The notes beneath the pieces are model-generated. The model did not search any database. It saw nothing but the letters and a program-made list of their open reading frames with translations, and had not been told where the DNA came from. From contig OZ059894.1 of assembly GCA_964057225.1 (NCBI GenBank), forward strand, positions 12,090,001 through 12,154,000: a stretch of 64,000 bases of DNA. Direction: 5' to 3'. This DNA comes from Auanema rhodensis. Taxonomy: Eukaryota > Animalia > Nematoda. The position numbers and the translations under genes were made by a program. This document shows positions 231 through 43,364 of the stretch, piece by piece (the stretch's first letter is position 1; each line of letters begins with the position of its first letter).

Positions 231-319
231 ACCAGTATAGTAATAGAACACATATTGAAGATTAATTCGATAAGAACAATTTATTGACGTAGAGAATGTT
301 TGTTCCGAAAAACTACAAT
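231..319 (-). pseudogene. Degenerate relic: element-B 3' end + U2 nt ~39-79 + element-B 5' end (present in every unit)
   Basis: 80/89 identity to the concatenation of 10365-10413 and 9631-9670. Confidence 0.85.
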
Positions 320-596
320 ATTAAACTATAAAAGTAACAAAAGCGTAGAGGCAGCAAAGACATGAATAAACATAAATGTAAATACAGAATTACCAGGTAG
401 TACATAAGTATGACAAAAAATTATAAGAAAGCCATGAAAATAGAAGGTTTGTGAACAAATGAGAGGTACATCTTTGATCGTATAGTCATTTCTAAACCGT
501 TCGTATGCTGCAGCATCGTCATAAGCGTCACTCAAGTTGAATTTCCATGTGTACTACACGATTTTCATTCTTATTGTTACATTCTTTCCCTGAGGG

Positions 597-782
597 AATG
601 GGCCGTTCCCGCCAGCAGTGCAAGAGCGGGTCGACCCGTGAGGTGGAGCTAGCAAGCCAGCATCTACCTCAAGTCTCAAAAATCGGTTAACCTTATTGTG
701 AACCAATGGAACACATATCGAAGGTTAATTCGATAAGAACGATTACTACACTTTGATCTTAGCCAAAAGGCCGAGAAGCGAT
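597..782 (-). ncRNA. U2: U2 snRNA, intact
   Basis: Minus strand ATCGCTTCTCGGCCTTTTGGCTAAGATCAAAGTGTAGTA; stem IIa TATCGAA/TTCGATA; IIc complement TTAACCTT/AAGGTTAA; Sm site GATTTTTG; stem-loop IV loop TTGCAC; 3' end approximate. Confidence 0.96.
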
Positions 783-860
783 ACAGCATAGCCATGAGTA
801 TCAAAGACATCAAGCAAATGTATCGTACTTGTTACGAGTGCACTCTCTCATTTGAATATA
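783..860 (-). promoter_or_regulatory. Presumed U2 Pol II promoter (PSE region); motif not identified
   Basis: Position only: immediately upstream of U2 +1 and near-invariant across units. Confidence 0.35.
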
Positions 861-3220: not shown

Positions 3221-6200
3221 ATGGTTTATTGAATAACTAATGTTATGATACAATAAATAACCAATAAAAAAGAGCCCAGAATCGGGGAGACGGTATTACC
3301 AGTACAACTTAAAACAGCAAGTAATTAAAAAGTACATAATAAGACACATTGCCAACAGAGGCTAAAACGACTCAAGAGTCGGGGGAGTGGGTTAAAAAAA
3401 ATGAACAAAAAAATGAATATTAAAGCAGAACAATGAGAAATCAAGTGCCGCTATGATCAAACAATTTGAGTGCCTACGGCAATGATGTTAAAAATAAACA
3501 ACAAAATACATGTACCAATGAAGGTCAGAAAGAAAGAAACAAAAGACAAAAATAAGTAATACAAAAAGTAAATACATTACAATCAAATCACAAACAAGTC
3601 AATTGATAATTTCTTCTTCATACTGCCTTACACCAGAAACATGTTCCACGTAGATATTCCTGGCCCACTTGATGGTATCGGCGACGACGAGCTTCTCCAT
3701 TAGCCGGTTGTAGTGGCTGCTGATCTTGAGTGATCGGAGGGCTTGTACGTTGAGCGGGTCCATAGTTCCAAGCATTCCTACGACATACGCTTCTACACTA
3801 GTCTTATAACCAAGACATTGGTATTGGCTGGCTATGTCAGCATATTTCCTCTCCTTTATCATACGCGCGGCTATCATGGCTTGTCGGCGGTTTTCATAGC
3901 TCACTGTAACATCAACGATACTACAGTGTTTTGCGTCATGATCGACCACTACTATGTCAGGTCGGAGTGTACTATTAATGCCAGGAAGAGGCTGGTTAGT
4001 GTAAACTTCTCCGTTTTTAGGCTCTGGCAGGGCTTTGATAAGACGGTCCACGATGTTGTTGTGGCGGAGTTGGATTGCTCTCGTGTGAAAGTGGCAGTGT
4101 CCAAGAACATGTGCAGCAGTTTCGTTGGGGTAACTACACCTGCGGCACTGTTTGTTTCCTTCTCCGTGTCTTCTACAGCCATTGAGCTGGAGAGTATTAA
4201 GTCGAGCCTTGTGGATGAATCGCCAATCAGCAAACCGTATGAAATCTCCCTTCGCCATAAAGTGATTGGACGCTTTGTTGAGCATTGTGACATCAAAGAC
4301 TTTCCCTTGATCCGGTTTTTGAAGAAGGATCCGAAGGTCTTTCAGCCATAATGCACGTCGCAGGCTTCTGTGGCATAGTGAAGGTGTTAACAGTTGGTTG
4401 TTTAGATTGAGTTCTAAACCACTTTCGAGGCATGTCCAGTTAGCGTTGATGAGTTTCTTGAGTTGACGCATCGCTACTCTTACTCTAGTCCAGATGGAGG
4501 AAACATCAGATGTTTCGGTGTCGAAAATGCCATCAACGGAACCGTTGTAATATGCAGCTGTCTCATCGTTACTGGCTTGACGTTTAATCCTTTTTGATGC
4601 TACTTTTATTGAGTCTTGATGCGCAATATCAGCTACTACAAGATCAGATGACTTCAAAAGTTGGTAGGCATGAGTGACTTCACAGACGTCTGACAGGTGT
4701 TGGAGTCGAGAGAGACCAAGTCCGCCGTAGTTAGTTGGCAGGTAGATTGGTTCAGCACTGGCGTTTGGAGGATAGTGCATCCATCTACGGGCACAGCGTT
4801 TGAGTTCTTTGTCAAAGGCGACTAGTTTACTCTTTGGGACGTGGCCATTCGTCATATGAAAATTAAGGCAGGGCATCAGGAAGGTGCGTACTGCGTCAGC
4901 TTTCTGCCATTCAGCCAGTAAGGATTTGTCAATTTTTTCCAAGTGTTGACTCATGATATTCACTGTTGGAACCGCAGACTTATGTAAATGCATTCCAGTA
5001 GGGATTCCCAGGTGGGAGTAGCTGTCAAATTTGCTGAGAGCGGGTAGAAAGCAGCTCTGAAGCATGTATGAGGCTGTTGATATTTTCCCTTTGTCGATCG
5101 TCAAAGTGGCGCATTTCGCTGGTTTGAAGGTCAAGCCTGTGAAATTAGCCGCATTTGATGCTGCGTCCAACATTTTCTGTAGATCTTCTGATGATGAGGA
5201 GACCAGGGCAAGGTCATCGGCGTACGCTAGCACAGCGATGTTGTGATTGTGTAGCTTATAGCCTGTAGAGGTTTCCAAGATGGTTTTAATTAGAGGTTCA
5301 ATGGCAAGGTTGAACAGGATCGGAGATAGTGGGGATCCTTGTAACACACCTGCGTGAACTGGAATGGTCGAAGTGAGTCCGGAGCCTGTCTGGATTCTTG
5401 TAGAGGCATCTGTGTATAGAGCTCGTACTCGGGATATTGAGGCTTCAGCCATTCCTGACCATCTTAGAACGTCTAGCAGAGTTTCGTGTGGCAGCGATCC
5501 AAAAGCGTTTGCGAGATCAAGCCAAGCAATTGCAATTTTCTCACGTTTACGTTTAGCGTCTGCAATGGTACTTTGCAACAAAAAGTTGTGTTCCATGCAT
5601 CCAGCTTTGGCCACAAAGCCCTTTTGGGAGGGAGAAAGTCTTTTTTCTGCTCTTGCCCATGTTAGCAGTCGATGCGTAAGACAAGCTGAGTACGTCTTAC
5701 CAATTGTGCACGAAAGTGCTATTGGTCGCCAGTTGTTAATGTCAGCTTTATCACCTTTCTTATGGATGAGGACGGTGGTCGACTCTTTCCAGGAAAAAGG
5801 GATGTGTCCTAGCTTGTGTACGGTGTTAAATATCGCTGCTAATATGTGACCTCCTTGGTCAAATTTCTTCCAGTGCGAGTATCGAAGTCCATCAGCTCCT
5901 GGAGCCGTATCGCTGCAACGTCGTATGCGTTCCCAGACTTCCAAAGGGGTGAAAACACCTTCTAATGGGTCGGTACTAGTTGGCAAATCCGGTCTGGTGA
6001 CTGTGATGGGGAGGGCTGGGCCTTGACTGCTGTGAACAGAAAGGAAGTGTTTTTCAACATCTGCAGATGGTATGGTGCAGGTTTCACTTTGTTCTCCGAG
6101 CAGTTGTCGAAAGGCTTTCTTCTTGTTGGCCCTCCAAAGCTTCTGGATCTTCATCGCCTGGGTTTTTTGGTCTTCCTCAGGTTGTGTGTGTGGTCGGCGC

Positions 6201-6929
6201 CTTTGTCGGAAGTTGGGAACTTTGATCATAATGTCAAGAGACTTTCTGATTGTGTCTACCAACTCTTCCAGGACCTGCTCGAGCTCACTTTTGCACACTA
6301 CCTTTTTAATTCTATCCACCCAAATATTTTCAGAGTTTCTATTCGGATCAGGGTCGGCAAAAGATGGTTCTGTACTCGGAACCCTGATCTCGTTGAATAT
6401 TTCACTCTCTCGCGGAAGGGGGGAAACTTCGGCCTCTGGGGACAAGTCCAGAATTGGGGCCTCAAATAAGCGTACCGTTGATGGAGATCCTTGTTCCTGT
6501 CCACTGGATGATGTTTCCTCCATTGTACGCTCCTCCACGGGCGGGGTGGTCGTCCTTGTGCCTGGTGGGCGGGTGTTCCTGATCCTCCGCAATATAGGGC
6601 GGGAACTGGGCTCTCTCGGAGATAGAGGTGAGATCACCACAGTTTCCTCTATGATGCGGAGGCATCCTTCAGCTTTTTTCTGATGGCTTTTAACGGCCTT
6701 CAGATTGCTGGTGAGGCCACAGGCACGGCACTCAAATTCTACTCCGACCTCATGTTCTCTCCGAAGATGGCGGACGAGACCATTGTGGTCTGAGTAGGAT
6801 CGCGGAATAGGAGCGCAGATTGAACAAGAAAAAGGGCTCTGAAGAGGCACCTTTAGCTTGTAAAGCCCTTGCTCCATCTCTAGCAGATCTAAAGACTTAC
6901 GTAGTACAGTTGCAATATCGATTTAGCCA
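3221..6929 (-). mobile_element. Element A copy 1: full-length U2-targeting RLE non-LTR retrotransposon (Utopia-like, NeSL/R2 group)
   Basis: Single ZnF-RT-RLE ORF; 3' end fused to U2 nt 38; same orientation as U2; 52-nt unique leader; ~380-nt 3' UTR ending TCAATAAACCAT. Confidence 0.93.
3599..6877 (-). CDS. Retrotransposon protein: N-terminal zinc fingers, reverse transcriptase, CCHC knuckle, restriction-like endonuclease (1092 aa)
   Basis: CSIC..HLRREH and CRAC..H..C; APGADG, WRPIAL, QKGF, LDLANAFGS, GVLQGSPLSPILF, YADD; CRRC..ETAAHVLGHC, RHN, RPDIVV..VDVT..YE, KERKY. Confidence 0.96.
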   Translation of the reverse strand: MEQGLYKLKVPLQSPFSCSICAPIPRSYSDHNGLVRHLRREHEVGVEFECRACGLTSNLKAVKSHQKKAEGCLRIIEETVVISPLSPREPSSRPILRRIRNTRPPGTRTTTPPVEERTMEETSSSGQEQGSPSTVRLFEAPILDLSPEAEVSPLPRESEIFNEIRVPSTEPSFADPDPNRNSENIWVDRIKKVVCKSELEQVLEELVDTIRKSLDIMIKVPNFRQRRRPHTQPEEDQKTQAMKIQKLWRANKKKAFRQLLGEQSETCTIPSADVEKHFLSVHSSQGPALPITVTRPDLPTSTDPLEGVFTPLEVWERIRRCSDTAPGADGLRYSHWKKFDQGGHILAAIFNTVHKLGHIPFSWKESTTVLIHKKGDKADINNWRPIALSCTIGKTYSACLTHRLLTWARAEKRLSPSQKGFVAKAGCMEHNFLLQSTIADAKRKREKIAIAWLDLANAFGSLPHETLLDVLRWSGMAEASISRVRALYTDASTRIQTGSGLTSTIPVHAGVLQGSPLSPILFNLAIEPLIKTILETSTGYKLHNHNIAVLAYADDLALVSSSSEDLQKMLDAASNAANFTGLTFKPAKCATLTIDKGKISTASYMLQSCFLPALSKFDSYSHLGIPTGMHLHKSAVPTVNIMSQHLEKIDKSLLAEWQKADAVRTFLMPCLNFHMTNGHVPKSKLVAFDKELKRCARRWMHYPPNASAEPIYLPTNYGGLGLSRLQHLSDVCEVTHAYQLLKSSDLVVADIAHQDSIKVASKRIKRQASNDETAAYYNGSVDGIFDTETSDVSSIWTRVRVAMRQLKKLINANWTCLESGLELNLNNQLLTPSLCHRSLRRALWLKDLRILLQKPDQGKVFDVTMLNKASNHFMAKGDFIRFADWRFIHKARLNTLQLNGCRRHGEGNKQCRRCSYPNETAAHVLGHCHFHTRAIQLRHNNIVDRLIKALPEPKNGEVYTNQPLPGINSTLRPDIVVVDHDAKHCSIVDVTVSYENRRQAMIAARMIKERKYADIASQYQCLGYKTSVEAYVVGMLGTMDPLNVQALRSLKISSHYNRLMEKLVVADTIKWARNIYVEHVSGVRQYEEEIIN

Positions 6930-6987
6930 TTAACCTTATTGTGAACCAATGGAACACATATCGAAGGTTAATTCGATAAGAACGATT
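6930..6987 (-). other. Duplicated U2 segment (nt 39-96) forming the head of element A copy 1
   Basis: Exact match to U2. Confidence 0.92.
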
Positions 6988-7153
6988 TATTGAATAACTA
7001 ATGTTATGAAACAATAAATAACCAATAAAAAAGAGCCCAGAATCGGGGAGACGGTATTACCAGTACAACTTAAAACAGCAAGTGATTAAAAAGTACAAAA
7101 TAAAACACATTACCAACAGAGGCTAAAACGACTCAAGAGTCGGGGGAGTGGGT
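6988..7153 (-). mobile_element. 166-bp 5'-truncated element A (3' UTR end only) inserted at U2 nt 38/39 in the regenerated target
   Basis: Matches the 3' UTR haplotype of the copies at 37 kb and 50.7 kb; flanked by U2 nt 39 and nt 38 with no TSD. Confidence 0.92.
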
Positions 7154-7191
7154 ACTACACTTTGATCTTAGCCAAAAGGCCGAGAAGCGAT
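7154..7191 (-). pseudogene. U2 5' part (nt 1-38)
   Basis: Exact match to the U2 5' end. Confidence 0.9.
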
Positions 7192-9632: not shown

Positions 9633-10374
9633 TATTGACGTAGAGAATGTTTGTCCCGGAGGACTACAATTTAAAAAAATAATTACTGAAGCCGGAAGGC
9701 AGCGAGAAATAAAATGGATACTACCTGCACTGAGTGCGTCGTATCAAAAAAAAAAAGAGAATGATAGTCTTAAAGAAGAGAACAGCACATAAAGAAAAGT
9801 AGAACTTCCATCTGATGCTACGGGTTTAGAGGAATAGCTTATGTCAGATATCGGTTAAACATAAATGATTAGGGCAATTGCGGAACAAGGATAGTGTAAT
9901 TAACATTGTTTACAGAGTTCAGGTTCTGAAGCTACGGATAAAGAAGGGTTAGCTTGACAGATTGAAGTTAAAATGAACAACGTGGCATATTTCAGTACAG
10001 CACAATAGTAATAGCGAGACTACGGAAAAAAAAAAAAGCTCTGTTCTGGTCCTGGAACGGCGGCTTCGACGTCTTCTGGGTGCCACTGCGGTTTGAAGGG
10101 TCAGCTAGCTTAACAGTAGAACGGCGGCAAGGCGGAACAGGAGAAGAACATCGACGATCCTCCGGCTCGGCTGTCATAGTGTGCGACTTCTTGTTCATAA
10201 TGGTAGCGGTGTCCTCGTGCTTCTTCTTTCTCCACAAAAATTACTACACTATCTGAGCGGGAGAAGCCACAGATAACATAGGACCGCCTCAAGGCCTGGT
10301 AGATCAACCAGTGTTGCTTCAATCACCAAGTATTGCGGCCTGGGCCCTTGGATCAATTCACAACACCAGTATAG
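9633..10374 (-). mobile_element. Element B copy 1: 742-bp non-autonomous U2-targeted insertion (SINE-like or internally deleted retroelement)
   Basis: Same target site as A; ends TCAATAAA; no RT; preceded by U2 nt 1-79 (41-bp duplication); no extended similarity to A by eye. Confidence 0.85.
9992..10198 (-). CDS. Possible short ORF in element B (68 aa, MNKKSHTMTAEPEDRRCSSPVPP...), perhaps a remnant N-terminus of a parent element
   Basis: First ATG of the tracked ORF; GC-rich, Pro/Ser/Arg-rich; no domain recognised. Confidence 0.2.
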   Translation of the reverse strand: MNKKSHTMTAEPEDRRCSSPVPPCRRSTVKLADPSNRSGTQKTSKPPFQDQNRAFFFFRSLAITIVLY

Positions 10375-12894: not shown

Positions 12895-13636
12895 TATTGA
12901 CGTAGAGAATGTTTGTCCCGGAGGACTACAATTTAAAAAAATAATTACTGAAGCCGGAAGGCAGCGAGAAATAAAATGGATACTACCTGCACTGAGTGCG
13001 TCGTATCAAAAAAAAAAAGAGAATGATAGTCTTAAAGAAGAGAACAGCACATAAAGAAAAGTAGAACTTCCATCTGATGCTACGGGTTTAGAGGAATAGC
13101 TTATGTCAGATATCGGTTAAACATAAATGATTAGGGCAATTGCGGAACAAGGATAGTGTAATTAACATTGTTTACAGAGTTCAGGTTCTGAAGCTACGGA
13201 TAAAGAAGGGTTAGCTTGACAGATTGAAGTTAAAATGAACAACGTGGCATATTTCAGTACAGCACAATAGTAATAGCGAGACTACGGAAAAAAAAAAAAG
13301 CTCTGTTCTGGTCCTGGAACGGCGGCTTCGACGTCTTCTGGGTGCCACTGCGGTTTGAAGGGTCAGCTAGCTTAACAGTAGAACGGCGGCAAGGCGGAAC
13401 AGGAGAAGAACATCGACGATCCTCCGGCTCGGCTGTCATAGTGTGCGACTTCTTGTTCATAATGGTAGCGGTGTCCTCGTGCTTCTTCTTTCTCCACAAA
13501 AATTACTACACTATCTGAGCGGGAGAAGCCACAGATAACATAGGACCGCCTCAAGGCCTGGTAGATCAACCAGTGTTGCTTCAATCACCAAGTATTGCGG
13601 CCTGGGCCCTTGGATCAATTCACAACACCAGTATAG
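12895..13636 (-). mobile_element. Element B copy 2
   Basis: Apparently identical to 9633-10374, same junctions. Confidence 0.85.
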
Positions 13637-14820: not shown

Positions 14821-16000
14821 ACAGTAAAAAGTCCAATCAAGAGAGAAATTTTTTCAACACATAGTTGTTTTTTTTTTAAATATCATTGTTTTTCCTCATA
14901 ACTCGGTTTAAACTCGTTCTAACCCGTTGAAATACGTCTAGAAAGTCTTTATAACATGCATATGTATGATAGAACTTCATATTTATTGTAATAGAAAATT
15001 TTATTTTCAGACGTCTTGGTTAACAATGATATGTTTTACCCCCTTATAATTTTTATCATAATGTTCCTTATACGGAACGCTCAATGAAACTTGCTTCCAG
15101 AAAAATTTCTTTCTATTTTTTCTTCATATGTACGTAGATACTATAGAGAACTATGATAGAAAACTTTAACATTCACGAAATCATCATTTCTCATTACGCT
15201 ACGGAGGTTTAAAAAGCTGTGTTTTACCTTATAATAGACCGGAAAACCCTTGTGTTAAAACTGGACCGTTTTTACACATATAAAAATGTCCCGTATTCGG
15301 GACCCTAATGTAACTTTTGATTCCCTATATTTTTTTTCATGAAATTTACAATCTACTGTAGAAAGAAGAATTATTTTTATAAAAACTGTAAATTTTTGAA
15401 AAATGAAAACAAAACGAAAACAAAAACAACTTTTTTTTGAACATTTTCTCACACAAGGGTCCCCCCTTACCTACTTTTTTTCTCATTACTCGTTTCAACC
15501 TCATCCGATCACTCTGCAAACATGTTTAATCGTTCTAACTTGTTGAAATACGTCTTAAAAGTCTAAACAACATGCATATGCATAATAGAAACCACCCGAA
15601 TAGGCCCCCACGCACTAAACGAGATATATACATTACCAGTATAGTAATAGAACACATATTGAAGATTAATTCGATAAGAACAATTTATTGACGTAGAGAA
15701 TGTTTGTTCCGAAAAACTACAATATTAAACTATAAAAGTAACAAAAGCGTAGAGGCAGCAAAGACATGAATAAACATAAATGTAAATACAGAATTACCAG
15801 GTAGTACATAAGTATGACAAAAAATTATAAGAAAGCCATGAAAATAGAAGGTTTGTGAACAAATGAGAGGTACATCTTTGATCGTATAGTCATTTCTAAA
15901 CCGTTCGTATGCTGCAGCATCGTCATAAGCGTCACTCAAGTTGAATTTCCATGTGTACTACACGATTTTCATTCTTATTGTTACATTCTTTCCCTGAGGG

Positions 16001-16186
16001 AATGGGCCGTTCCCGCCAGCAGTGCAAGAGCGGGTCGACCCGTGAGGTGGAGCTAGCAAGCCAGCATCTACCTCAAGTCTCAAAAATCGGTTAACCTTAT
16101 TGTGAACCAATGGAACACATATCGAAGGTTAATTCGATAAGAACGATTACTACACTTTGATCTTAGCCAAAAGGCCGAGAAGCGAT
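16001..16186 (-). ncRNA. U2: U2 snRNA, intact
   Basis: Copy of 597-782. Confidence 0.95.
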
Positions 16187-16628: not shown

Positions 16629-16747
16629 AGCTTACGACACCCGGGATTCCCAAGCCGTCTCCGATCCAAGTACTAACCGGGCCCAACGTTGCTTGACTTG
16701 CCAGATCGGACGGGATGGCGTACTTTCAACGTGGTATGGTCGTAAGC
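16629..16747 (-). rRNA. 5S rRNA (only copy in this shortened unit)
   Basis: Copy of 1225-1343; unit is 360 bp shorter. Confidence 0.96.
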
Positions 16748-16935: not shown

Positions 16936-18115
16936 ACAGTAAAAAGTCCAATCAAGAGAGAAATTTTTTCAACACATAGTTGTTTTTTTTTTAAATATCA
17001 TTGTTTTTCCTCATAACTCGGTTTAAACTCGTTCTAACCCGTTGAAATACGTCTAGAAAGTCTTTATAACATGCATATGTATGATAGAACTTCATATTTA
17101 TTGTAATAGAAAATTTTATTTTCAGACGTCTTGGTTAACAATGATATGTTTTACCCCCTTATAATTTTTATCATAATGTTCCTTATACGGAACGCTCAAT
17201 GAAACTTGCTTCCAGAAAAATTTCTTTCTATTTTTTCTTCATATGTACGTAGATACTATAGAGAACTATGATAGAAAACTTTAACATTCACGAAATCATC
17301 ATTTCTCATTACGCTACGGAGGTTTAAAAAGCTGTGTTTTACCTTATAATAGACCGGAAAACCCTTGTGTTAAAACTGGACCGTTTTTACACATATAAAA
17401 ATGTCCCGTATTCGGGACCCTAATGTAACTTTTGATTCCCTATATTTTTTTTCATGAAATTTACAATCTACTGTAGAAAGAAGAATTATTTTTATAAAAA
17501 CTGTAAATTTTTGAAAAATGAAAACAAAACGAAAACAAAAACAACTTTTTTTTGAACATTTTCTCACACAAGGGTCCCCCCTTACCTACTTTTTTTCTCA
17601 TTACTCGTTTCAACCTCATCCGATCACTCTGCAAACATGTTTAATCGTTCTAACTTGTTGAAATACGTCTTAAAAGTCTAAACAACATGCATATGCATAA
17701 TAGAAACCACCCGAATAGGCCCCCACGCACTAAACGAGATATATACATTACCAGTATAGTAATAGAACACATATTGAAGATTAATTCGATAAGAACAATT
17801 TATTGACGTAGAGAATGTTTGTTCCGAAAAACTACAATATTAAACTATAAAAGTAACAAAAGCGTAGAGGCAGCAAAGACATGAATAAACATAAATGTAA
17901 ATACAGAATTACCAGGTAGTACATAAGTATGACAAAAAATTATAAGAAAGCCATGAAAATAGAAGGTTTGTGAACAAATGAGAGGTACATCTTTGATCGT
18001 ATAGTCATTTCTAAACCGTTCGTATGCTGCAGCATCGTCATAAGCGTCACTCAAGTTGAATTTCCATGTGTACTACACGATTTTCATTCTTATTGTTACA
18101 TTCTTTCCCTGAGGG

Positions 18116-18301
18116 AATGGGCCGTTCCCGCCAGCAGTGCAAGAGCGGGTCGACCCGTGAGGTGGAGCTAGCAAGCCAGCATCTACCTCAAGTCTCAAAA
18201 ATCGGTTAACCTTATTGTGAACCAATGGAACACATATCGAAGGTTAATTCGATAAGAACGATTACTACACTTTGATCTTAGCCAAAAGGCCGAGAAGCGA
18301 T
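18116..18301 (-). ncRNA. U2: U2 snRNA, intact
   Basis: Copy of 597-782. Confidence 0.95.
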
Positions 18302-19412: not shown

Positions 19413-20592
19413 ACAGTAAAAAGTCCAATCAAGAGAGAAATTTTTTCAACACATAGTTGTTTTTTTTTTAAATATCATTGTTTTTCCTCATAACTCGGTT
19501 TAAACTCGTTCTAACCCGTTGAAATACGTCTAGAAAGTCTTTATAACATGCATATGTATGATAGAACTTCATATTTATTGTAATAGAAAATTTTATTTTC
19601 AGACGTCTTGGTTAACAATGATATGTTTTACCCCCTTATAATTTTTATCATAATGTTCCTTATACGGAACGCTCAATGAAACTTGCTTCCAGAAAAATTT
19701 CTTTCTATTTTTTCTTCATATGTACGTAGATACTATAGAGAACTATGATAGAAAACTTTAACATTCACGAAATCATCATTTCTCATTACGCTACGGAGGT
19801 TTAAAAAGCTGTGTTTTACCTTATAATAGACCGGAAAACCCTTGTGTTAAAACTGGACCGTTTTTACACATATAAAAATGTCCCGTATTCGGGACCCTAA
19901 TGTAACTTTTGATTCCCTATATTTTTTTTCATGAAATTTACAATCTACTGTAGAAAGAAGAATTATTTTTATAAAAACTGTAAATTTTTGAAAAATGAAA
20001 ACAAAACGAAAACAAAAACAACTTTTTTTTGAACATTTTCTCACACAAGGGTCCCCCCTTACCTACTTTTTTTCTCATTACTCGTTTCAACCTCATCCGA
20101 TCACTCTGCAAACATGTTTAATCGTTCTAACTTGTTGAAATACGTCTTAAAAGTCTAAACAACATGCATATGCATAATAGAAACCACCCGAATAGGCCCC
20201 CACGCACTAAACGAGATATATACATTACCAGTATAGTAATAGAACACATATTGAAGATTAATTCGATAAGAACAATTTATTGACGTAGAGAATGTTTGTT
20301 CCGAAAAACTACAATATTAAACTATAAAAGTAACAAAAGCGTAGAGGCAGCAAAGACATGAATAAACATAAATGTAAATACAGAATTACCAGGTAGTACA
20401 TAAGTATGACAAAAAATTATAAGAAAGCCATGAAAATAGAAGGTTTGTGAACAAATGAGAGGTACATCTTTGATCGTATAGTCATTTCTAAACCGTTCGT
20501 ATGCTGCAGCATCGTCATAAGCGTCACTCAAGTTGAATTTCCATGTGTACTACACGATTTTCATTCTTATTGTTACATTCTTTCCCTGAGGG

Positions 20593-20778
20593 AATGGGCC
20601 GTTCCCGCCAGCAGTGCAAGAGCGGGTCGACCCGTGAGGTGGAGCTAGCAAGCCAGCATCTACCTCAAGTCTCAAAAATCGGTTAACCTTATTGTGAACC
20701 AATGGAACACATATCGAAGGTTAATTCGATAAGAACGATTACTACACTTTGATCTTAGCCAAAAGGCCGAGAAGCGAT
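20593..20778 (-). ncRNA. U2: U2 snRNA, intact
   Basis: Copy of 597-782. Confidence 0.95.
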
Positions 20779-21895: not shown

Positions 21896-23075
21896 ACAGT
21901 AAAAAGTCCAATCAAGAGAGAAATTTTTTCAACACATAGTTGTTTTTTTTTTAAATATCATTGTTTTTCCTCATAACTCGGTTTAAACTCGTTCTAACCC
22001 GTTGAAATACGTCTAGAAAGTCTTTATAACATGCATATGTATGATAGAACTTCATATTTATTGTAATAGAAAATTTTATTTTCAGACGTCTTGGTTAACA
22101 ATGATATGTTTTACCCCCTTATAATTTTTATCATAATGTTCCTTATACGGAACGCTCAATGAAACTTGCTTCCAGAAAAATTTCTTTCTATTTTTTCTTC
22201 ATATGTACGTAGATACTATAGAGAACTATGATAGAAAACTTTAACATTCACGAAATCATCATTTCTCATTACGCTACGGAGGTTTAAAAAGCTGTGTTTT
22301 ACCTTATAATAGACCGGAAAACCCTTGTGTTAAAACTGGACCGTTTTTACACATATAAAAATGTCCCGTATTCGGGACCCTAATGTAACTTTTGATTCCC
22401 TATATTTTTTTTCATGAAATTTACAATCTACTGTAGAAAGAAGAATTATTTTTATAAAAACTGTAAATTTTTGAAAAATGAAAACAAAACGAAAACAAAA
22501 ACAACTTTTTTTTGAACATTTTCTCACACAAGGGTCCCCCCTTACCTACTTTTTTTCTCATTACTCGTTTCAACCTCATCCGATCACTCTGCAAACATGT
22601 TTAATCGTTCTAACTTGTTGAAATACGTCTTAAAAGTCTAAACAACATGCATATGCATAATAGAAACCACCCGAATAGGCCCCCACGCACTAAACGAGAT
22701 ATATACATTACCAGTATAGTAATAGAACACATATTGAAGATTAATTCGATAAGAACAATTTATTGACGTAGAGAATGTTTGTTCCGAAAAACTACAATAT
22801 TAAACTATAAAAGTAACAAAAGCGTAGAGGCAGCAAAGACATGAATAAACATAAATGTAAATACAGAATTACCAGGTAGTACATAAGTATGACAAAAAAT
22901 TATAAGAAAGCCATGAAAATAGAAGGTTTGTGAACAAATGAGAGGTACATCTTTGATCGTATAGTCATTTCTAAACCGTTCGTATGCTGCAGCATCGTCA
23001 TAAGCGTCACTCAAGTTGAATTTCCATGTGTACTACACGATTTTCATTCTTATTGTTACATTCTTTCCCTGAGGG

Positions 23076-23261
23076 AATGGGCCGTTCCCGCCAGCAGTGC
23101 AAGAGCGGGTCGACCCGTGAGGTGGAGCTAGCAAGCCAGCATCTACCTCAAGTCTCAAAAATCGGTTAACCTTATTGTGAACCAATGGAACACATATCGA
23201 AGGTTAATTCGATAAGAACGATTACTACACTTTGATCTTAGCCAAAAGGCCGAGAAGCGAT
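23076..23261 (-). ncRNA. U2: U2 snRNA, intact
   Basis: Copy of 597-782. Confidence 0.95.
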
Positions 23262-25705: not shown

Positions 25706-28395
25706 ATGGTTTATTGAATAACTAATGTTATGATACAATAAATAACCAATAAAAAAGAGCCCAGAATCGGGGAGACGGTATTACCAGTACAACTTAAAAC
25801 AGCAAGTAATTAAAAAGTACATAATAAGACACATTGCCAACAGAGGCTAAAACGACTCAAGAGTCGGGGGAGTGGGTTAAAAAAAAATGAACAAAAAAAA
25901 TGAATATTAAAGCAGAACAATGAGAAATCAAGTGCCGCTATGATCAAACAATTTGAGTGCCTACGGCAATGATGTTAAAAATAAACAACAAAATACATGT
26001 ACCAATGAAGGTCAGAAAGAAAGAAACAAAAGACAAAATAAGTAATACAAAAAGTAAATACATTACAATCAAATCACAAACAAGTCAATTGATAATTTCT
26101 TCTTCATATTGCCTTACACCAGAAACATGTTCCACGTAGATATTCCTGGCCCACTTGATGGTATCGGCGACGACGAGCTTCTCCATTAGCCGGTTGTAGT
26201 GGCTGCTGATCTTGAGTGATCGGAGGGCTTGTCCGTTGAGCGGGTCCATAGTTCCAAGCATTCCTACGACATACGCTTCTACACTAGTCTTATAACCAAG
26301 ACATTGGTATTGGCTGGCTATGTCAGCATATTTCCTCTCCTTTATCATACGCGCGGCTATCATGGCTTGACGGCGGTTTTCATAGCTCACTGTAACATCA
26401 ACGATACTACAGTGTTTTGCGTCATGATCGACCACTACTATGTCAGGTCGGAGTGTACTATTAATGCCAGGAAGAGGCTGGTTAGTGTAAACTTCTCCGT
26501 TTTTAGGCTCTGGCAGGGCTTTGATAAGACGGTCCACGATGTTGTTGTGGCGGAGTTGGATTGCTCTCGTGTGAGAGTGGCAGTGTCCAAGAACATGTGC
26601 AGCAGTTTCGTTGGAGTAACTACACCTGCGGCACTGTTTGTTTCCTTCTCCGTGTCTTCTACAGCCATTGAGCTGGAGAGTATTGAGTCGAGCCTTGTGG
26701 ATGAATCGCCAATCAGCAAACCGTATGAAATCTCCCTTCGCCATAAAGTGATTGGACGCTTTGTTGAGCATTGTGACATCAAAGACTTTCCCTTGATCCG
26801 GTTTTTGAAGAAGGATCCGAAGGTCTTTCAGCCATAATGCACGTCGCAGGCTTCTGTGGCATAGTGAAGGTGTTAACAGTTGGTTGTTTAGATTGAGTTC
26901 TAAACCACTTTCGAGGCATGTCCAGTTAGCGTTGATGAGTTTCTTGAGTTGACGCATCGCTACTCTTACTCTAGTCCAGATGGAGGAAACATCAGATGTT
27001 TCGGTGTCGAAAATGCCATCAACGGAACCGTTGTAATATGCAGCTGTCTCATCGTTACTGGCTTGACGTTTAATCCTTTTTGATGCTACTTTTTTTGAGT
27101 CTTGATGCGCAATATCAGCTACTACAAGATCAGATGACTTCAAAAGTTGGTAGGCATGAGTGACTTCACAGACGTCTGACAGGTGTTGGAGTCGAGAGAG
27201 ACCAAGTCCGCCGTAGTTAGTTGGCAGGTAGATTGGTTCAGCACTGGCGTTTGGAGGATAGTGCATCCATCTACGGGCACAGCGTTTGAGTTCTTTGTCA
27301 AAGGCGACTAGTTTACTCTTTGGGACGTGGCCATTCGTCATATGAAAATTAAGGCAGGGCATCAGGAAGGTGCGTACTGCGTCAGCTTTCTGCCATTCAG
27401 CAAGTAAGGATTTGTCAATTTTTTCCAAGTGTTGACTCATAATATTCACTGTTGGAACCGCAGACTTATGTAAATGCATTCCAGTAGGGATTCCCAGGTG
27501 GGAGTAGCTGTCAAATTTGCTAAGAGCGGGTAGAGAGGAGCTCTGTAGCATGTATGAGGCTGTTGATATTTTCCCTTTGTCGATCGTCAAGGTGGCGCAT
27601 TTCGCTGGTTTGAAGGTCAAGCCTGTGAAATTAGCCGCATTTGATGCTGCGTCCAACATTTTCTGTAGATCTTCTGATGATGAGGAGACCAGGGCAAGGT
27701 CATCGGCGTACGCTAGCACAGCGATGTTGTGGTTGTGTAGCTTATAGCCTGTAGAGGTTTCCAAGATGGTTTTAATTAGAGGTTCAATGGCAAGGTTGAA
27801 CAGGATCGGAGATAGTGGGGATCCTTGTAACACACCTGCGTGAACTGGAATGGTCGAAGTGAGTCCGGAGCCTGTCTGGATTCTTGTAGAGGCATCTGTG
27901 TATAGAGCTCGTACTCGGGATATTGAGGCTTCAGCCATTCCTGACCATCTTAGAACGTCTAGCAGAGTTTCGTGTGGCAGCGATCCAAAAGCGTTTGCGA
28001 GATCAAGCCAAGCAATTGCAATTTTCTCACGTTTACGTTTAGCGTCCGCAATGGTACTTTGCAACATAAAGTTGTGTTCCATGCATCCAGCTTTGGCCAC
28101 AAAGCCCTTTTGGGAGGGAGAAAGTCTTTTTTCTGCTCTTGCCCATGTTAGCAGTCGATGCGTAAGACAAGCTGAGTACGTCTTACCAATTGTGCACGAA
28201 AGTGCTATTGGTCGCCAGTTGTTAATGTCAGCTTTATCACCTTTCTTATGGATGAGGACGGTGGTCGACTCTTTCCAGGAAAAAGGGATGTGTCCTAGCT
28301 TGTGTACGGTGTTAAATATCGCTGCTAATATGTGACCTCCTTGGTCAAATTTCTTCCAGTGCGAGTATCGAAGTCCATCAGCTCCTGGAGCCGTA
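25706..28395 (-). mobile_element. Element A copy 2: 5'-truncated (~2.7 kb), diverged haplotype, with ~1.24 kb upstream host deletion
   Basis: Breaks in the codons for DTAPGADG (ggagccgta|cgt|ttctaaccc) and joins the spacer at the equivalent of position ~1988. Confidence 0.92.
26085..28395 (-). pseudogene. 5'-truncated RT-RLE reading frame (tracked as 26085-28100, 671 aa); lacks zinc fingers and native start
   Basis: About 99% identical to the C-terminal part of the 1092-aa protein. Confidence 0.88.
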
Positions 28396-29482
28396 CGTTT
28401 CTAACCCGTTGAAATACGTCTAGAAAGTCTTTATAACATGCATATGTATGATAGAACTTCATATTTATTGTAATAGAAAATTTTATTTTCAGACGTCTTG
28501 GTTAACAATGATATGTTTTACCCCCTTATAATTTTTATCATAATGTTCCTTATACGGAACGCTCAATGAAACTTGCTTCCAGAAAAATTTCTTTCTATTT
28601 TTTCTTCATATGTACGTAGATACTATAGAGAACTATGATAGAAAACTTTAACATTCACGAAATCATCATTTCTCATTACGCTACGGAGGTTTAAAAAGCT
28701 GTGTTTTACCTTATAATAGACCGGAAAACCCTTGTGTTAAAACTGGACCGTTTTTACACATATAAAAATGTCCCGTATTCGGGACCCTAATGTAACTTTT
28801 GATTCCCTATATTTTTTTTCATGAAATTTACAATCTACTGTAGAAAGAAGAATTATTTTTATAAAAACTGTAAATTTTTGAAAAATGAAAACAAAACGAA
28901 AACAAAAACAACTTTTTTTTGAACATTTTCTCACACAAGGGTCCCCCCTTACCTACTTTTTTTCTCATTACTCGTTTCAACCTCATCCGATCACTCTGCA
29001 AACATGTTTAATCGTTCTAACTTGTTGAAATACGTCTTAAAAGTCTAAACAACATGCATATGCATAATAGAAACCACCCGAATAGGCCCCCACGCACTAA
29101 ACGAGATATATACATTACCAGTATAGTAATAGAACACATATTGAAGATTAATTCGATAAGAACAATTTATTGACGTAGAGAATGTTTGTTCCGAAAAACT
29201 ACAATATTAAACTATAAAAGTAACAAAAGCGTAGAGGCAGCAAAGACATGAATAAACATAAATGTAAATACAGAATTACCAGGTAGTACATAAGTATGAC
29301 AAAAAATTATAAGAAAGCCATGAAAATAGAAGGTTTGTGAACAAATGAGAGGTACATCTTTGATCGTATAGTCATTTCTAAACCGTTCGTATGCTGCAGC
29401 ATCGTCATAAGCGTCACTCAAGTTGAATTTCCATGTGTACTACACGATTTTCATTCTTATTGTTACATTCTTTCCCTGAGGG

Positions 29483-29668
29483 AATGGGCCGTTCCCGCCA
29501 GCAGTGCAAGAGCGGGTCGACCCGTGAGGTGGAGCTAGCAAGCCAGCATCTACCTCAAGTCTCAAAAATCGGTTAACCTTATTGTGAACCAATGGAACAC
29601 ATATCGAAGGTTAATTCGATAAGAACGATTACTACACTTTGATCTTAGCCAAAAGGCCGAGAAGCGAT
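29483..29668 (-). ncRNA. U2: U2 snRNA, intact
   Basis: Copy of 597-782. Confidence 0.95.
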
Positions 29669-30781: not shown

Positions 30782-31961
30782 ACAGTAAAAAGTCCAATCA
30801 AGAGAGAAATTTTTTCAACACATAGTTGTTTTTTTTTTAAATATCATTGTTTTTCCTCATAACTCGGTTTAAACTCGTTCTAACCCGTTGAAATACGTCT
30901 AGAAAGTCTTTATAACATGCATATGTATGATAGAACTTCATATTTATTGTAATAGAAAATTTTATTTTCAGACGTCTTGGTTAACAATGATATGTTTTAC
31001 CCCCTTATAATTTTTATCATAATGTTCCTTATACGGAACGCTCAATGAAACTTGCTTCCAGAAAAATTTCTTTCTATTTTTTCTTCATATGTACGTAGAT
31101 ACTATAGAGAACTATGATAGAAAACTTTAACATTCACGAAATCATCATTTCTCATTACGCTACGGAGGTTTAAAAAGCTGTGTTTTACCTTATAATAGAC
31201 CGGAAAACCCTTGTGTTAAAACTGGACCGTTTTTACACATATAAAAATGTCCCGTATTCGGGACCCTAATGTAACTTTTGATTCCCTATATTTTTTTTCA
31301 TGAAATTTACAATCTACTGTAGAAAGAAGAATTATTTTTATAAAAACTGTAAATTTTTGAAAAATGAAAACAAAACGAAAACAAAAACAACTTTTTTTTG
31401 AACATTTTCTCACACAAGGGTCCCCCCTTACCTACTTTTTTTCTCATTACTCGTTTCAACCTCATCCGATCACTCTGCAAACATGTTTAATCGTTCTAAC
31501 TTGTTGAAATACGTCTTAAAAGTCTAAACAACATGCATATGCATAATAGAAACCACCCGAATAGGCCCCCACGCACTAAACGAGATATATACATTACCAG
31601 TATAGTAATAGAACACATATTGAAGATTAATTCGATAAGAACAATTTATTGACGTAGAGAATGTTTGTTCCGAAAAACTACAATATTAAACTATAAAAGT
31701 AACAAAAGCGTAGAGGCAGCAAAGACATGAATAAACATAAATGTAAATACAGAATTACCAGGTAGTACATAAGTATGACAAAAAATTATAAGAAAGCCAT
31801 GAAAATAGAAGGTTTGTGAACAAATGAGAGGTACATCTTTGATCGTATAGTCATTTCTAAACCGTTCGTATGCTGCAGCATCGTCATAAGCGTCACTCAA
31901 GTTGAATTTCCATGTGTACTACACGATTTTCATTCTTATTGTTACATTCTTTCCCTGAGGG

Positions 31962-32147
31962 AATGGGCCGTTCCCGCCAGCAGTGCAAGAGCGGGTCGAC
32001 CCGTGAGGTGGAGCTAGCAAGCCAGCATCTACCTCAAGTCTCAAAAATCGGTTAACCTTATTGTGAACCAATGGAACACATATCGAAGGTTAATTCGATA
32101 AGAACGATTACTACACTTTGATCTTAGCCAAAAGGCCGAGAAGCGAT
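31962..32147 (-). ncRNA. U2: U2 snRNA, intact
   Basis: Copy of 597-782. Confidence 0.95.
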
Positions 32148-33254: not shown

Positions 33255-34434
33255 ACAGTAAAAAGTCCAATCAAGAGAGAAATTTTTTCAACACATAGTT
33301 GTTTTTTTTTTAAATATCATTGTTTTTCCTCATAACTCGGTTTAAACTCGTTCTAACCCGTTGAAATACGTCTAGAAAGTCTTTATAACATGCATATGTA
33401 TGATAGAACTTCATATTTATTGTAATAGAAAATTTTATTTTCAGACGTCTTGGTTAACAATGATATGTTTTACCCCCTTATAATTTTTATCATAATGTTC
33501 CTTATACGGAACGCTCAATGAAACTTGCTTCCAGAAAAATTTCTTTCTATTTTTTCTTCATATGTACGTAGATACTATAGAGAACTATGATAGAAAACTT
33601 TAACATTCACGAAATCATCATTTCTCATTACGCTACGGAGGTTTAAAAAGCTGTGTTTTACCTTATAATAGACCGGAAAACCCTTGTGTTAAAACTGGAC
33701 CGTTTTTACACATATAAAAATGTCCCGTATTCGGGACCCTAATGTAACTTTTGATTCCCTATATTTTTTTTCATGAAATTTACAATCTACTGTAGAAAGA
33801 AGAATTATTTTTATAAAAACTGTAAATTTTTGAAAAATGAAAACAAAACGAAAACAAAAACAACTTTTTTTTGAACATTTTCTCACACAAGGGTCCCCCC
33901 TTACCTACTTTTTTTCTCATTACTCGTTTCAACCTCATCCGATCACTCTGCAAACATGTTTAATCGTTCTAACTTGTTGAAATACGTCTTAAAAGTCTAA
34001 ACAACATGCATATGCATAATAGAAACCACCCGAATAGGCCCCCACGCACTAAACGAGATATATACATTACCAGTATAGTAATAGAACACATATTGAAGAT
34101 TAATTCGATAAGAACAATTTATTGACGTAGAGAATGTTTGTTCCGAAAAACTACAATATTAAACTATAAAAGTAACAAAAGCGTAGAGGCAGCAAAGACA
34201 TGAATAAACATAAATGTAAATACAGAATTACCAGGTAGTACATAAGTATGACAAAAAATTATAAGAAAGCCATGAAAATAGAAGGTTTGTGAACAAATGA
34301 GAGGTACATCTTTGATCGTATAGTCATTTCTAAACCGTTCGTATGCTGCAGCATCGTCATAAGCGTCACTCAAGTTGAATTTCCATGTGTACTACACGAT
34401 TTTCATTCTTATTGTTACATTCTTTCCCTGAGGG

Positions 34435-34620
34435 AATGGGCCGTTCCCGCCAGCAGTGCAAGAGCGGGTCGACCCGTGAGGTGGAGCTAGCAAGCCAGCA
34501 TCTACCTCAAGTCTCAAAAATCGGTTAACCTTATTGTGAACCAATGGAACACATATCGAAGGTTAATTCGATAAGAACGATTACTACACTTTGATCTTAG
34601 CCAAAAGGCCGAGAAGCGAT
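34435..34620 (-). ncRNA. U2: U2 snRNA, intact
   Basis: Copy of 597-782. Confidence 0.95.
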
Positions 34621-40000: not shown

Positions 40001-40789
40001 TTCTGGATCTTCATCGCCTGGGTTTTTTGGTCTTCCTCAGGTTGTGTGTGTGGTCGGCGCCTTTGTCGGAAGTTGGGAACTTTGATCATAATGTCAAGAG
40101 ACTTTCTGATTGTGTCTACCAACTCTTCCAGGACCTGCTCGAGCTCACTTTTGCACACTACCTTTTTAATTCTATCCACCCAAATATTTTCAGAGTTTCT
40201 ATTCGGATCAGGGTCGGCAAAAGATGGTTCTGTACTCGGAACCCTGATCTCGTTGAATATTTCACTCTCTCGCGGAAGGGGGGAAACTTCGGCCTCTGGG
40301 GACAAGTCCAGAATTGGGGCCTCAAACAAGCGTACCGTTGATGGAGATCCTTGTTCCTGTCCACTGGATGATGTTTCCTCCATTGTACGCTCCTCCACGG
40401 GCGGGGTGGTCGTCCTTGTGCCTGGTGGGCGGGTGTTCCTGATCCTCCGCAATATAGGGCGGGAACTGGGCTCTCTCGGAGATAGAGGTGAGATCACCAC
40501 AGTTTCCTCTATGATGCGGAGGCATCCTTCAGCTTTTTTCTGATGGCTTTTAACGGCCTTCAGATTGCTGGTGAGGCCACAGGCACGGCACTCAAATTCT
40601 ACTCCGACCTCATGTTCTCTCCGAAGATGGCGGACGAGACCATTGTGGTCTGAGTAGGATCGCGGAATAGGAGCGCAGATTGAACAAGAAAAAGGGCTCT
40701 GAAGAGGCACCTTTAGCTTGTAAAGCCCTTGCTCCATCTCTAGCAGATCTAAAGACTTACGTAGTACAGTTGCAATATCGATTTAGCCA
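37063..40789 (-). mobile_element. Element A copy 3: full-length Utopia-like non-LTR retrotransposon
   Basis: Intact ORF; same junctions as copy 1. Confidence 0.93.
37459..40737 (-). CDS. Retrotransposon ZnF-RT-RLE protein (1092 aa)
   Basis: Same motifs as 3599-6877; differs only at the last residue (H vs N). Confidence 0.96.
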   Translation of the reverse strand: MEQGLYKLKVPLQSPFSCSICAPIPRSYSDHNGLVRHLRREHEVGVEFECRACGLTSNLKAVKSHQKKAEGCLRIIEETVVISPLSPREPSSRPILRRIRNTRPPGTRTTTPPVEERTMEETSSSGQEQGSPSTVRLFEAPILDLSPEAEVSPLPRESEIFNEIRVPSTEPSFADPDPNRNSENIWVDRIKKVVCKSELEQVLEELVDTIRKSLDIMIKVPNFRQRRRPHTQPEEDQKTQAMKIQKLWRANKKKAFRQLLGEQSETCTIPSADVEKHFLSVHSSQGPALPITVTRPDLPTSTDPLEGVFTPLEVWERIRRCSDTAPGADGLRYSHWKKFDQGGHILAAIFNTVHKLGHIPFSWKESTTVLIHKKGDKADINNWRPIALSCTIGKTYSACLTHRLLTWARAEKRLSPSQKGFVAKAGCMEHNFLLQSTIADAKRKREKIAIAWLDLANAFGSLPHETLLDVLRWSGMAEASISRVRALYTDASTRIQTGSGLTSTIPVHAGVLQGSPLSPILFNLAIEPLIKTILETSTGYKLHNHNIAVLAYADDLALVSSSSEDLQKMLDAASNAANFTGLTFKPAKCATLTIDKGKISTASYMLQSCFLPALSKFDSYSHLGIPTGMHLHKSAVPTVNIMSQHLEKIDKSLLAEWQKADAVRTFLMPCLNFHMTNGHVPKSKLVAFDKELKRCARRWMHYPPNASAEPIYLPTNYGGLGLSRLQHLSDVCEVTHAYQLLKSSDLVVADIAHQDSIKVASKRIKRQASNDETAAYYNGSVDGIFDTETSDVSSIWTRVRVAMRQLKKLINANWTCLESGLELNLNNQLLTPSLCHRSLRRALWLKDLRILLQKPDQGKVFDVTMLNKASNHFMAKGDFIRFADWRFIHKARLNTLQLNGCRRHGEGNKQCRRCSYPNETAAHVLGHCHFHTRAIQLRHNNIVDRLIKALPEPKNGEVYTNQPLPGINSTLRPDIVVVDHDAKHCSIVDVTVSYENRRQAMIAARMIKERKYADIASQYQCLGYKTSVEAYVVGMLGTMDPLNVQALRSLKISSHYNRLMEKLVVADTIKWARNIYVEHVSGVRQYEEEIIH

Positions 40790-40885
40790 TTAACCTTATT
40801 GTGAACCAATGGAACACATATCGAAGGTTAATTCGATAAGAACGATTACTACACTTTGATCTTAGCCAAAAGGCCGAGAAGCGAT
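40790..40885 (-). pseudogene. U2 nt 1-96 head fused to element A (nt 38-96 duplicated)
   Basis: Exact match to U2; normal upstream flank retained. Confidence 0.92.
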
Positions 40886-43178: not shown

Positions 43179-43364
43179 AATGGGCCGTTCCCGCCAGCAG
43201 TGCAAGAGCGGGTCGACCCGTGAGGTGGAGCTAGCAAGCCAGCATCTACCTCAAGTCTCAAAAATCGGTTAACCTTATTGTGAACCAATGGAACACATAT
43301 CGAAGGTTAATTCGATAAGAACGATTACTACACTTTGATCTTAGCCAAAAGGCCGAGAAGCGAT
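43179..43364 (-). ncRNA. U2: U2 snRNA, intact
   Basis: Copy of 597-782. Confidence 0.95.

What the first reader, a model, noticed from the sequence alone, without database searches (positions are those of the whole stretch)
736..750. U2 has a non-canonical sequence exactly at the retroelement target, next to the branch-site motif
Seen: all intact copies read GTGTAGTA-ATC-GTTC. Established: this stretch is GTGTAGTA-TCT-GTTC from yeast to C. elegans to human, and it forms the 3' arm of the branch-point-interacting stem-loop (BSL) and carries modified uridines. The change (one A gained, one T lost) starts within ~2 nt of the insertion site and would weaken BSL pairing to AGATCAAAG. Inference: either a lineage-specific spliceosome variant, or a host escape mutation or repair scar that swept the array and that elements A and B have since tracked, i.e. 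an arms race in a near-invariant RNA.
Basis: partly seen in the sequence, partly recalled or inferred. Interest (0 to 1): 0.75.

Follow-up and report, generated by a model that had tools for sequence, protein, structure and literature searches.

The report
Altered U2 snRNA at retrotransposon site
Every U2 spliceosomal RNA gene in this roundworm genome has three changed bases (AUC instead of the near-universal UCU) right after the branch-site-binding motif, exactly where U2-specific jumping genes cut; it is very probably the worm's working U2, but a causal link to the jumping genes is not shown.

Summary
The window is a tandem U2 + 5S array on the minus strand. All 14 intact U2 genes and 4 U2 heads read GUAGUA-AUC-GUUC (737-751, one base off the stated coordinates).

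- **Whole assembly (181 Mb):** the variant 15-mer occurs 399 times and the canonical one never. No canonical fossil was found.
- **Dispersed genes:** U2 genes on three other contigs have unrelated flanks but a conserved promoter-like block, and they also carry the variant. It is therefore the species' U2, not an array-only sweep.
- **Control:** 25 distinct eukaryotic U2 types found as contaminants in public genomes all read UCU.
- **Insertion site:** elements A (Utopia-like) and B join U2 at nt 38|39 in human numbering, the published Utopia site. The three changed bases are the first three after that junction.
- **No protection:** at least 116 element junctions sit on the variant site. Relatives of A (46-47% identical) hit canonical TCTGTTC.

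The arms-race and repair-scar readings remain untested. The scan had already flagged this variant elsewhere in this genome.

The parts
593..782 (-). Intact U2 snRNA gene (190 nt). It is the first of 14 identical copies in the window. The others are at 15997-16186, 18112-18301, 20589-20778, 23072-23261, 29479-29668, 31958-32147, 34431-34620, 43175-43364, 45650-45839, 48121-48310, 56869-57058, 59346-59535 and 61828-62017.
   Evidence: RF00004 at 148.4 bits, full model 1-192. The copies are identical.
741..743 (-). The changed triplet AUC (own U2 nt 40-42; human-numbering nt 39-41, canonically UCU).
   Evidence: The cmscan alignment shows no match to the consensus at these three columns.
744..749 (-). 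Branch-point recognition sequence GUAGUA, unchanged.
750..758 (-). 5' arm of the branchpoint-interacting stem-loop (GAUCAAAGU). It is unchanged and of the same type as in C. elegans and insects, with the extra A.
   Evidence: Pairing scheme from PMC13019295.
737..744 (-). 3' arm of the branchpoint-interacting stem-loop, here AAUCGUUC instead of AUCUGUUC. It is also the start of the extended branch helix.
820..845 (-). Promoter-like (PSE-like) block at -63 to -38 upstream of U2. It is conserved at the same distance in the array and in the dispersed U2 loci on C3, C4 and C8.
   Evidence: The flanks are otherwise unalignable.
3247..6930 (-). Element A, full length (3.7 kb). It carries a 1092-aa ORF (3599-6877) with a reverse transcriptase domain and is Utopia-like. 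Other copies are at 37089-40790 and 50777-54478. A 5'-truncated copy is at 25732-28395 and a 146-bp nested 3' fragment at 7008-7153.
9684..10374 (-). Element B, non-coding, 691 bp. A second identical copy is at 12946-13636.
3230..3250 (-). 3' junction of element A with U2: ...CCATT|AATCGTTC. The U2 body resumes at the changed triplet.
   Evidence: The same junction string occurs 68 times in the genome.
9675..9690 (-). 3' junction of element B with U2: ...CAATAA|ATCGTTC.
   Evidence: The same junction string occurs 48 times in the genome.
7150..7191 (-). U2 head nt 1-39 ending in GUAGUA and joined to a nested 5'-truncated element A. This fixes the upstream side of the insertion point.
258..292 (-). 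Fossil element-B/U2 junction in the array spacer. It reads ATTG rather than ATCG, which is C-to-T decay of the variant and not the canonical TCTG.

Best explanation
This is the worm's only U2 snRNA and almost certainly its working one. It carries a fixed, lineage-specific three-base change: human-numbering nt 39-41 read AUC instead of UCU.

Shown:
- The change is present in all of about 400 U2 copies, including independent loci on other contigs that keep a promoter-like block.
- No canonical copy or canonical fossil exists in the assembly.
- The rest of the RNA is canonical: the 5' end, the U6-pairing region, GUAGUA, stem-loops IIa, III and IV, and the Sm region.

Inferred mechanism:
- The RNA works as ordinary U2. 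Its branchpoint-interacting stem-loop loses the loop-proximal G31·U39 wobble pair. The A-U pair next to C28-G42 moves up by one step.
- The hairpin is therefore somewhat easier to open, which human mutants link to weaker discrimination between branch sites. This should matter little in nematodes, whose branch sites are loosely defined.
- The universally pseudouridylated U41 is replaced by C, so the modification pattern must differ.

Origin is not resolved. The changed bases are the first three after the nick made by U2-specific Utopia retrotransposons, which are abundant here. My odds are about 60% that this is unrelated to the elements and about 35-40% that they caused it. The elements insert freely into the variant site today.
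For: - **Fixation:** searches show the variant fixed in the window and genome-wide, with the canonical form absent.
- **Dispersed loci:** one search shows copies on C3, C4 and C8 that differ from the array at 3-6 positions in the 3' domain but share the variant.
- **Promoter block:** one search shows a promoter-like block at -63 to -38 in all four locus classes, whose flanks are otherwise unrelated.
- **Intact RNA:** one search gives full-length Rfam matches at 148 bits. The only mismatch to strongly conserved consensus positions in the 5' 50 nt is at the triplet.
- **Structure and modification:** searches give the stem-loop pair list and roughly 2 kcal/mol of weakening. One search shows the overall predicted fold is unchanged. 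One search gives pseudouridines at the equivalents of rat 39 and 41 in C. elegans, with 41 universal.
- **Rarity:** searches show 25 of 25 distinct U2 types elsewhere read TCT. One search agrees from the literature supplements.
- **Insertion site and load:** searches place the junction at nt 38|39 and count at least 116 occupied variant sites.
Against: - No expression data could be reached, so the claim that this is the working U2 rests on the absence of any alternative and on promoter conservation.
- The assembly could lack a canonical copy in an unassembled region.
- U2 loci exchange sequence by gene conversion, so sharing the variant does not prove independent selection at each locus.
- Nearest-neighbour energies say little about a hairpin that exists only when held by proteins.
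- The exact coincidence with the nick site argues somewhat against a purely unrelated origin.
Confidence: 0.75

Rival explanations
1. Nick-site scar. Repeated nicking or abortive target-primed reverse transcription by Utopia at nt 38|39 added an A. A later loss of one U restored the spacing. Concerted evolution then spread the nearly neutral product through all U2 genes, possibly helped by elements that carry U2 nt 1-95 on their own RNA and rewrite the head of each gene they enter.
For: - The change can be read as +A directly at the junction and -U three bases on.
- Element 3' ends finish in A.
- Full-length A and B insertions duplicate U2 nt 39-95 or 40-79, so each insertion carries a complete U2 head that includes the site.
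- The nicking load is heavy, with at least 116 junctions.
- The triplet is otherwise invariant, so an unusual mutational input would help to explain a change there.
Against: - No intermediate form (AUCUG or UCG) exists in the genome.
- The same end state is reached by three substitutions.
- Other Utopia-laden species in the 2015 survey keep TCT.
- The C3 and C4 loci show no element traces nearby.
Confidence: 0.2
2. Arms race. The target changed because it reduced cutting or priming by Utopia and so swept. Elements A and B then adapted to the new site.
For: - The changed bases are the first three downstream of the nick.
- The closest fetched relatives of element A (46-47% identity) insert at canonical TCTGTTC, so this element lineage now uses a different flank.
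I could not test that.
Against: - There is no protection now: 22% of U2 bodies are preceded by an element, and the full-length A copies are 99-100% identical to one another.
- No older insertions into a canonical site survive to show the order of events.
- Nothing shows that Utopia proteins read these three bases.
- A change in an essential RNA is a costly defence against an element that is tolerated in a 400-copy array.
Confidence: 0.12
3. The array copies are not the expressed U2, and a canonical gene elsewhere does the work.
For: Large arrays can hold inactive copies, and no expression data were available.
Against: - The canonical string is absent from 181 Mb, and the best Rfam hits all carry the variant.
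- A looser pattern finds no U2 with any base other than A at the first changed position.
Confidence: 0.03

Closest known systems
Canonical U2 snRNA (Rfam RF00004), e.g. C. elegans, Drosophila, human
   Same: It has full-length architecture and the same 5' end, U6-pairing region, GUAGUA, stem-loops and Sm region. The extra A before GUGUAGUA is shared with C. elegans and insects.
   Different: Human-numbering nt 39-41 read AUC instead of UCU. This alters two stem-loop pairs and removes the U that is pseudouridylated in every U2 mapped so far.
Utopia, U2-specific restriction-like-endonuclease non-LTR retrotransposons (Kojima and Jurka 2015, PMC4640811)
   Same: The 3' junction is the same: the U2 flank starts at nt 39. 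The 5' junction is variable. The element has a single ORF with a reverse transcriptase domain. Its protein relatives include known Utopia hosts and metagenome copies flanked by U2.
   Different: The flank here begins ATCGTTC, not TCTGTTC. Target duplications are long (57 bp for A, 40 bp for B), compared with none in arthropods and 20 bp in reptiles.
Engineered human BSL mutants (NAR 2026, PMC13019295)
   Same: Loss of the loop-proximal G31·U39 pair resembles mutant M6. The disturbed A29-U41 pair resembles M5. Such mutants are tolerated and flatten the advantage of strong branch sites.
   Different: Those mutants change the 5' arm and are minority orthogonal RNAs in cultured cells. Here the 3' arm is changed in the sole U2 of a whole animal.
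R2 elements and their invariant 28S rDNA target
   Same: A site-specific element lives in a multicopy essential RNA gene, and concerted evolution homogenises the host array.
   Different: To my knowledge (from memory, not tested here) the R2 target stays conserved in host lineages. Here the host target itself differs at the nick.

Membership tests
U2 spliceosomal snRNA (RF00004) | Covariance-model score above the gathering threshold over the full model | tested here: met
   148.4 bits against a threshold of 46, model positions 1-192. Dispersed copies score 146.7-150.6 bits.
U2 spliceosomal snRNA (RF00004) | Branch-point recognition sequence GUAGUA and the U6-pairing 5' region | tested here: met
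   Identical to the consensus in the cmscan alignment.
U2 spliceosomal snRNA (RF00004) | Invariant UCUGUUC directly 3' of GUAGUA | tested here: not met
   It reads AUCGUUC in all copies. 25 of 25 other U2 types read UCU.
U2 spliceosomal snRNA (RF00004) | Expressed, capped and Sm-bound RNA | not testable with these tools
   No transcript data were available. The only indirect support is a promoter-like block conserved at four locus classes.
Utopia retrotransposons | 3' junction at U2 nt 38|39 | tested here: met
   Searches compared.
Utopia retrotransposons | Single ORF with a reverse transcriptase domain, related to Utopia-type proteins | tested here: met
   RVT_1 at E = 5e-28. Relatives at 46-47% identity are followed by U2 bodies.
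Utopia retrotransposons | C-terminal restriction-like (PD-(D/E)xK) endonuclease and zinc fingers | not tested
   The only indication is a weak zf-RVT hit at residues 881-932. The motif was not inspected because the element is not the subject of this finding.

The most novel reading that the evidence does not exclude
A site-specific retrotransposon has reshaped its own target in an essential, otherwise invariant spliceosomal RNA. Either its nicking created the change, or the host changed the site to escape and the element followed. The whole animal would then splice with a U2 whose branchpoint-interacting stem-loop and conserved pseudouridine site were altered by a conflict with a mobile element.
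Probability: 0.3. Interest if true: 0.85.

Novelty: new variant of a known kind. Interest (0 to 1): 0.6.

Why it matters
Nucleotides 39-45 of U2 are treated as invariant. They form one arm of the stem-loop that presents the branch-site-binding bases, then part of the extended branch helix, and they carry pseudouridines needed for snRNP assembly in vertebrate systems.

An animal that lives with AUC instead of UCU is a natural experiment on how much of that conservation is really required. It also bears on whether the U41 pseudouridine is dispensable or can be relocated.

If the change is tied to the Utopia nick, it would be a rare case of a mobile element altering the sequence of a core RNA machine. 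It would also offer a matched pair of targets (ATC and TCT) for studying how restriction-like-endonuclease retrotransposons choose their site, which matters for their use as insertion tools.

Tried and rejected
1. **Metagenome scan for the variant.** Scanning 241 million JGI metagenome records for the variant 20-mer gave 2 hits, and neither is U2.
2. **Literature search.** A full-text search for the variant string found only unrelated primer matches. No paper links Utopia, nematodes and U2 after 2015.
3. **Relatives' U2 through Utopia protein homologues.**
   - The best hits (55-56% identity, soil metagenomes) and the Diploscapter contig end before the 3' junction.
   - Two hits at 46-47% identity gave arthropod-type canonical flanks.
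   - The representative search named relatives in Plectus sambesii and Mesorhabditis spiculigera.
The lead that a second nematode genus is also altered therefore stays untested.
4. **Synteny route.** A search with the trefoil exon next to the intronic U2 on C4 found nothing.
5. **Spurious ORFs across U2 as handles.** They are not in the protein collection.
6. **Branch-site consensus.** The loci already held contain only 9 candidate introns, too few for a consensus.
7. **Viral collection.** It holds no relative of the element.
8. **Alternative fold created by the variant.** Rejected: the predicted fold and energy of U2 are the same with either triplet.
9. **Perriman and Ares 2010.** The paper is not held, so its content is cited from memory only.

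The third large protein search was left unused, because without contig retrieval it could not yield U2 DNA.

Full report
**What is in the window.** The window is a tandem array on the minus strand. Each unit holds one U2 snRNA gene and usually two 5S rRNA genes. Rfam finds 14 full-length U2 genes at 148.4 bits, 37 5S genes, and ten partial U2 hits where units are interrupted. The U2 is of the nematode/insect type, with an extra A before GUGUAGUA and a UUAACC loop in stem-loop IIa.

**The observation.**
- GTGTAGTAATCGTTC occurs 18 times in the window, in 14 intact genes and 4 U2 heads, with 0 expected by chance. The canonical GTGTAGTATCTGTTC does not occur even with one mismatch allowed.
In the first gene the AUC triplet is at 743-741 and GUAGUA at 749-744.
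- In the cmscan alignment these three columns are the only mismatch to strongly conserved consensus positions in the first 50 nt.

**It is genome-wide, not an array sweep.**
- In the 181-Mb assembly the variant 15-mer occurs 399 times and the canonical one 0 times.
- A pattern allowing any base but A at the first changed position finds two places, neither of them U2.
- A search for a canonical 3' flank joined to this species' own stem IIa, with up to two mismatches, finds only ATTG, AATG and GTTG forms. ATTG and GTTG fit decay of ATCG or of the junction. AATG is ambiguous and cannot be assigned to either the ATCG or the canonical TCTG state. None reads TCTG.
- U2 genes on contigs C3, C4 and C8 differ from the array copies at 3-6 positions in the 3' domain but have the same 5' half, including AUC.
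- Their flanks are unrelated to the array and to each other, except for one block. It reads GAGTGCACTCGTAACAAGTACGATAC in the array, lies at -63 to -38 in every class, and has clear relatives in the other loci. This is what a proximal sequence element of an snRNA promoter looks like.
- So several independently placed, promoter-bearing genes carry the variant and no alternative exists. I take it to be the working U2. Expression itself could not be tested.

**How unusual it is.**
- I scanned the public bacterial and archaeal genome collection with a degenerate pattern that allows eight triplets at the site. It pulled out 48 U2 copies from eukaryotic contamination, representing 25 distinct U2 types of animal, plant/protist and oomycete kind. 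All 48 read TCT.
- The twelve matches outside a U2 context, eleven of them non-TCT and including the single ATC, lie in ordinary bacterial sequence.
- The supplements of the Utopia paper hold about 100 TCTGTTCT flanks and no GTAGTAA. C. elegans and Trichinella are canonical there.
- The variant 20-mer is absent from U2 genes in 241 million metagenome records and from the searchable literature.

**Relation to the retroelements.**
- Element A is 3.7 kb with a 1092-aa ORF that has a reverse transcriptase domain. The window holds three full-length copies, one 5'-truncated copy and one 146-bp nested fragment.
- Element B is a 691-bp non-coding element present twice.
- All 3' ends abut (A)ATCGTTC. 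The nested copy shows GUAGUA directly upstream and ATCG directly downstream of the insert. The insertion point is therefore between A38 and nt 39 in human numbering. This is exactly the junction reported for Utopia and, in parallel, for Keno (PMC4640811). The three changed bases are the first three after it.
- The 5' junctions lie after U2 nt 95 (A) or nt 79 (B). Each insertion therefore duplicates 57 or 40 nt of U2 and leaves a complete U2 head, target included, in front of the element.
- Genome-wide there are 48 + 68 exact element/U2 junction strings on the variant site, against 399 uninterrupted sites. Full-length A copies are 99-100% identical to one another. The variant gives no protection today.
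- Two metagenome relatives of A at 46-47% identity are followed by arthropod-type U2 bodies that start at canonical (A)TCTGTTC. This element lineage uses TCT elsewhere and ATC here. Either it adapted, or it does not read these bases.

**What the change does to the RNA.**
- The human branchpoint-interacting stem-loop pairs G25-C45, A26-U44, U27·U43, C28-G42, A29-U41, A30·C40, G31·U39 and U32-A38 (PMC13019295).
- With AAUCGUUC as the 3' arm, C28-G42 and the base of the stem are kept. The A-U pair can form only one step further up, with U40. The G·U wobble next to the loop becomes G·A.
- Evaluated as naked RNA, the canonical register costs +4.0 kcal/mol and the best variant registers +5.8 to +6.4. 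Neither hairpin is stable without proteins, as the literature also says.
- The overall predicted fold of U2 is unchanged.
- In the human study, loss of loop-proximal pairs was tolerated and reduced the advantage of strongly complementary branch sites. By inference, the worm's U2 should open slightly more easily, which fits an animal group with loosely defined branch sites.
- C. elegans U2 carries pseudouridines at the equivalents of rat positions 39 and 41, and position 41 is modified in every U2 mapped (PMC1276797). Here 39 is A and 41 is C, and only U40 remains. The modification pattern, and any guide RNA for it, must differ.

**Origin.** Three readings remain.
- *Unrelated lineage-specific change.* Nothing contradicts it except the coincidence of position.
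- *Scar of nicking or abortive reverse transcription, spread by concerted evolution.* The change can be read as +A at the junction and -U three bases on, and element ends finish in A. But no intermediate survives, and other Utopia hosts are canonical.
- *Escape followed by adaptation of the elements.* The position fits, but there is no protection now, no older insertions in a canonical site, and no evidence that the protein reads these bases.

I put about 60% on no causal link and 35-40% on a link (scar 20%, arms race 12%).

If true, that would raise the odds of a link or show that the variant is older than this genus. I could not test it.

**Limits.**
Only 9 candidate introns lie in the loci already held.
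- No collection of eukaryotic genomes was available.
The one exon search was done by reference and found nothing.
- The scan had already flagged this same variant in other windows of this genome (s1-393702, s1-407203 and others). My tests agree with those notes. They add the 25-type control, the promoter comparison across loci, the junction counts and the canonical flanks of the element's relatives.

**Verdict.** It is a new variant of a known RNA and very probably functional. Its link to the retrotransposon is suggestive but unproven.

Noticed in passing
L059:13-202 with exons at L056:8976-9281 and L059:661-960 (G000 contig C4, about 15.44 Mb): One dispersed U2 gene lies inside an intron of a GH31 alpha-glucosidase-like gene, in the same orientation. 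A trefoil exon lies upstream and exons with a WIDMNEP-type motif lie downstream.
   Followed up: partly
L032, L033, L035, L037 (G000 contig C8): The eight identical U2 genes on C8 are followed a few bases after their 3' end by head-less U2 copies that begin at AATCGTTC, the element junction point.
   Followed up: partly
L070, L073, L079, L091, L100, L103 (Anaerolineae MAG CBDAUV01) and L080, L083 (Metamycoplasmataceae MAG): Public 'bacterial' metagenome-assembled genomes contain tandem arrays of eukaryotic U2 genes, spaced about 2.08 kb and 1.41 kb apart. This is host or eukaryote contamination in those bins.
   Followed up: partly
window 3230-3250 versus 6985-7000 and 9675-9690: Element A 3' ends come in two forms. 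Full-length copies end ...AATAAACCATT before AATCG. The nested 146-bp copy ends ...AATAA before ATCG, as element B does.
   Followed up: no
window 258-292 and every array unit (e.g. 2740-2775): The variant creates a CpG (AUCG). The fossil junction fixed in each spacer reads ATTG and carries further C-to-T changes, so it is older than the current homogenised U2 but already of the variant type.
   Followed up: partly
window 16629-16747: One array unit has a single 5S gene where the other units have two, 360 bp apart.
   Followed up: no
window 25732-28395: A 5'-truncated element A copy (2.68 kb, 98.2% identical to the full-length copy). I did not find a U2 head at its 5' end.
   Followed up: no
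L046-L049 (G000 contig C5, about 7.68 Mb): A tandem repeat with about 1.9-kb spacing has units containing ...GAATAA|ATGTTCTTATCGAATTAACC. This is a U2 body fragment whose junction differs from both ATCG and TCTG.
   Followed up: no
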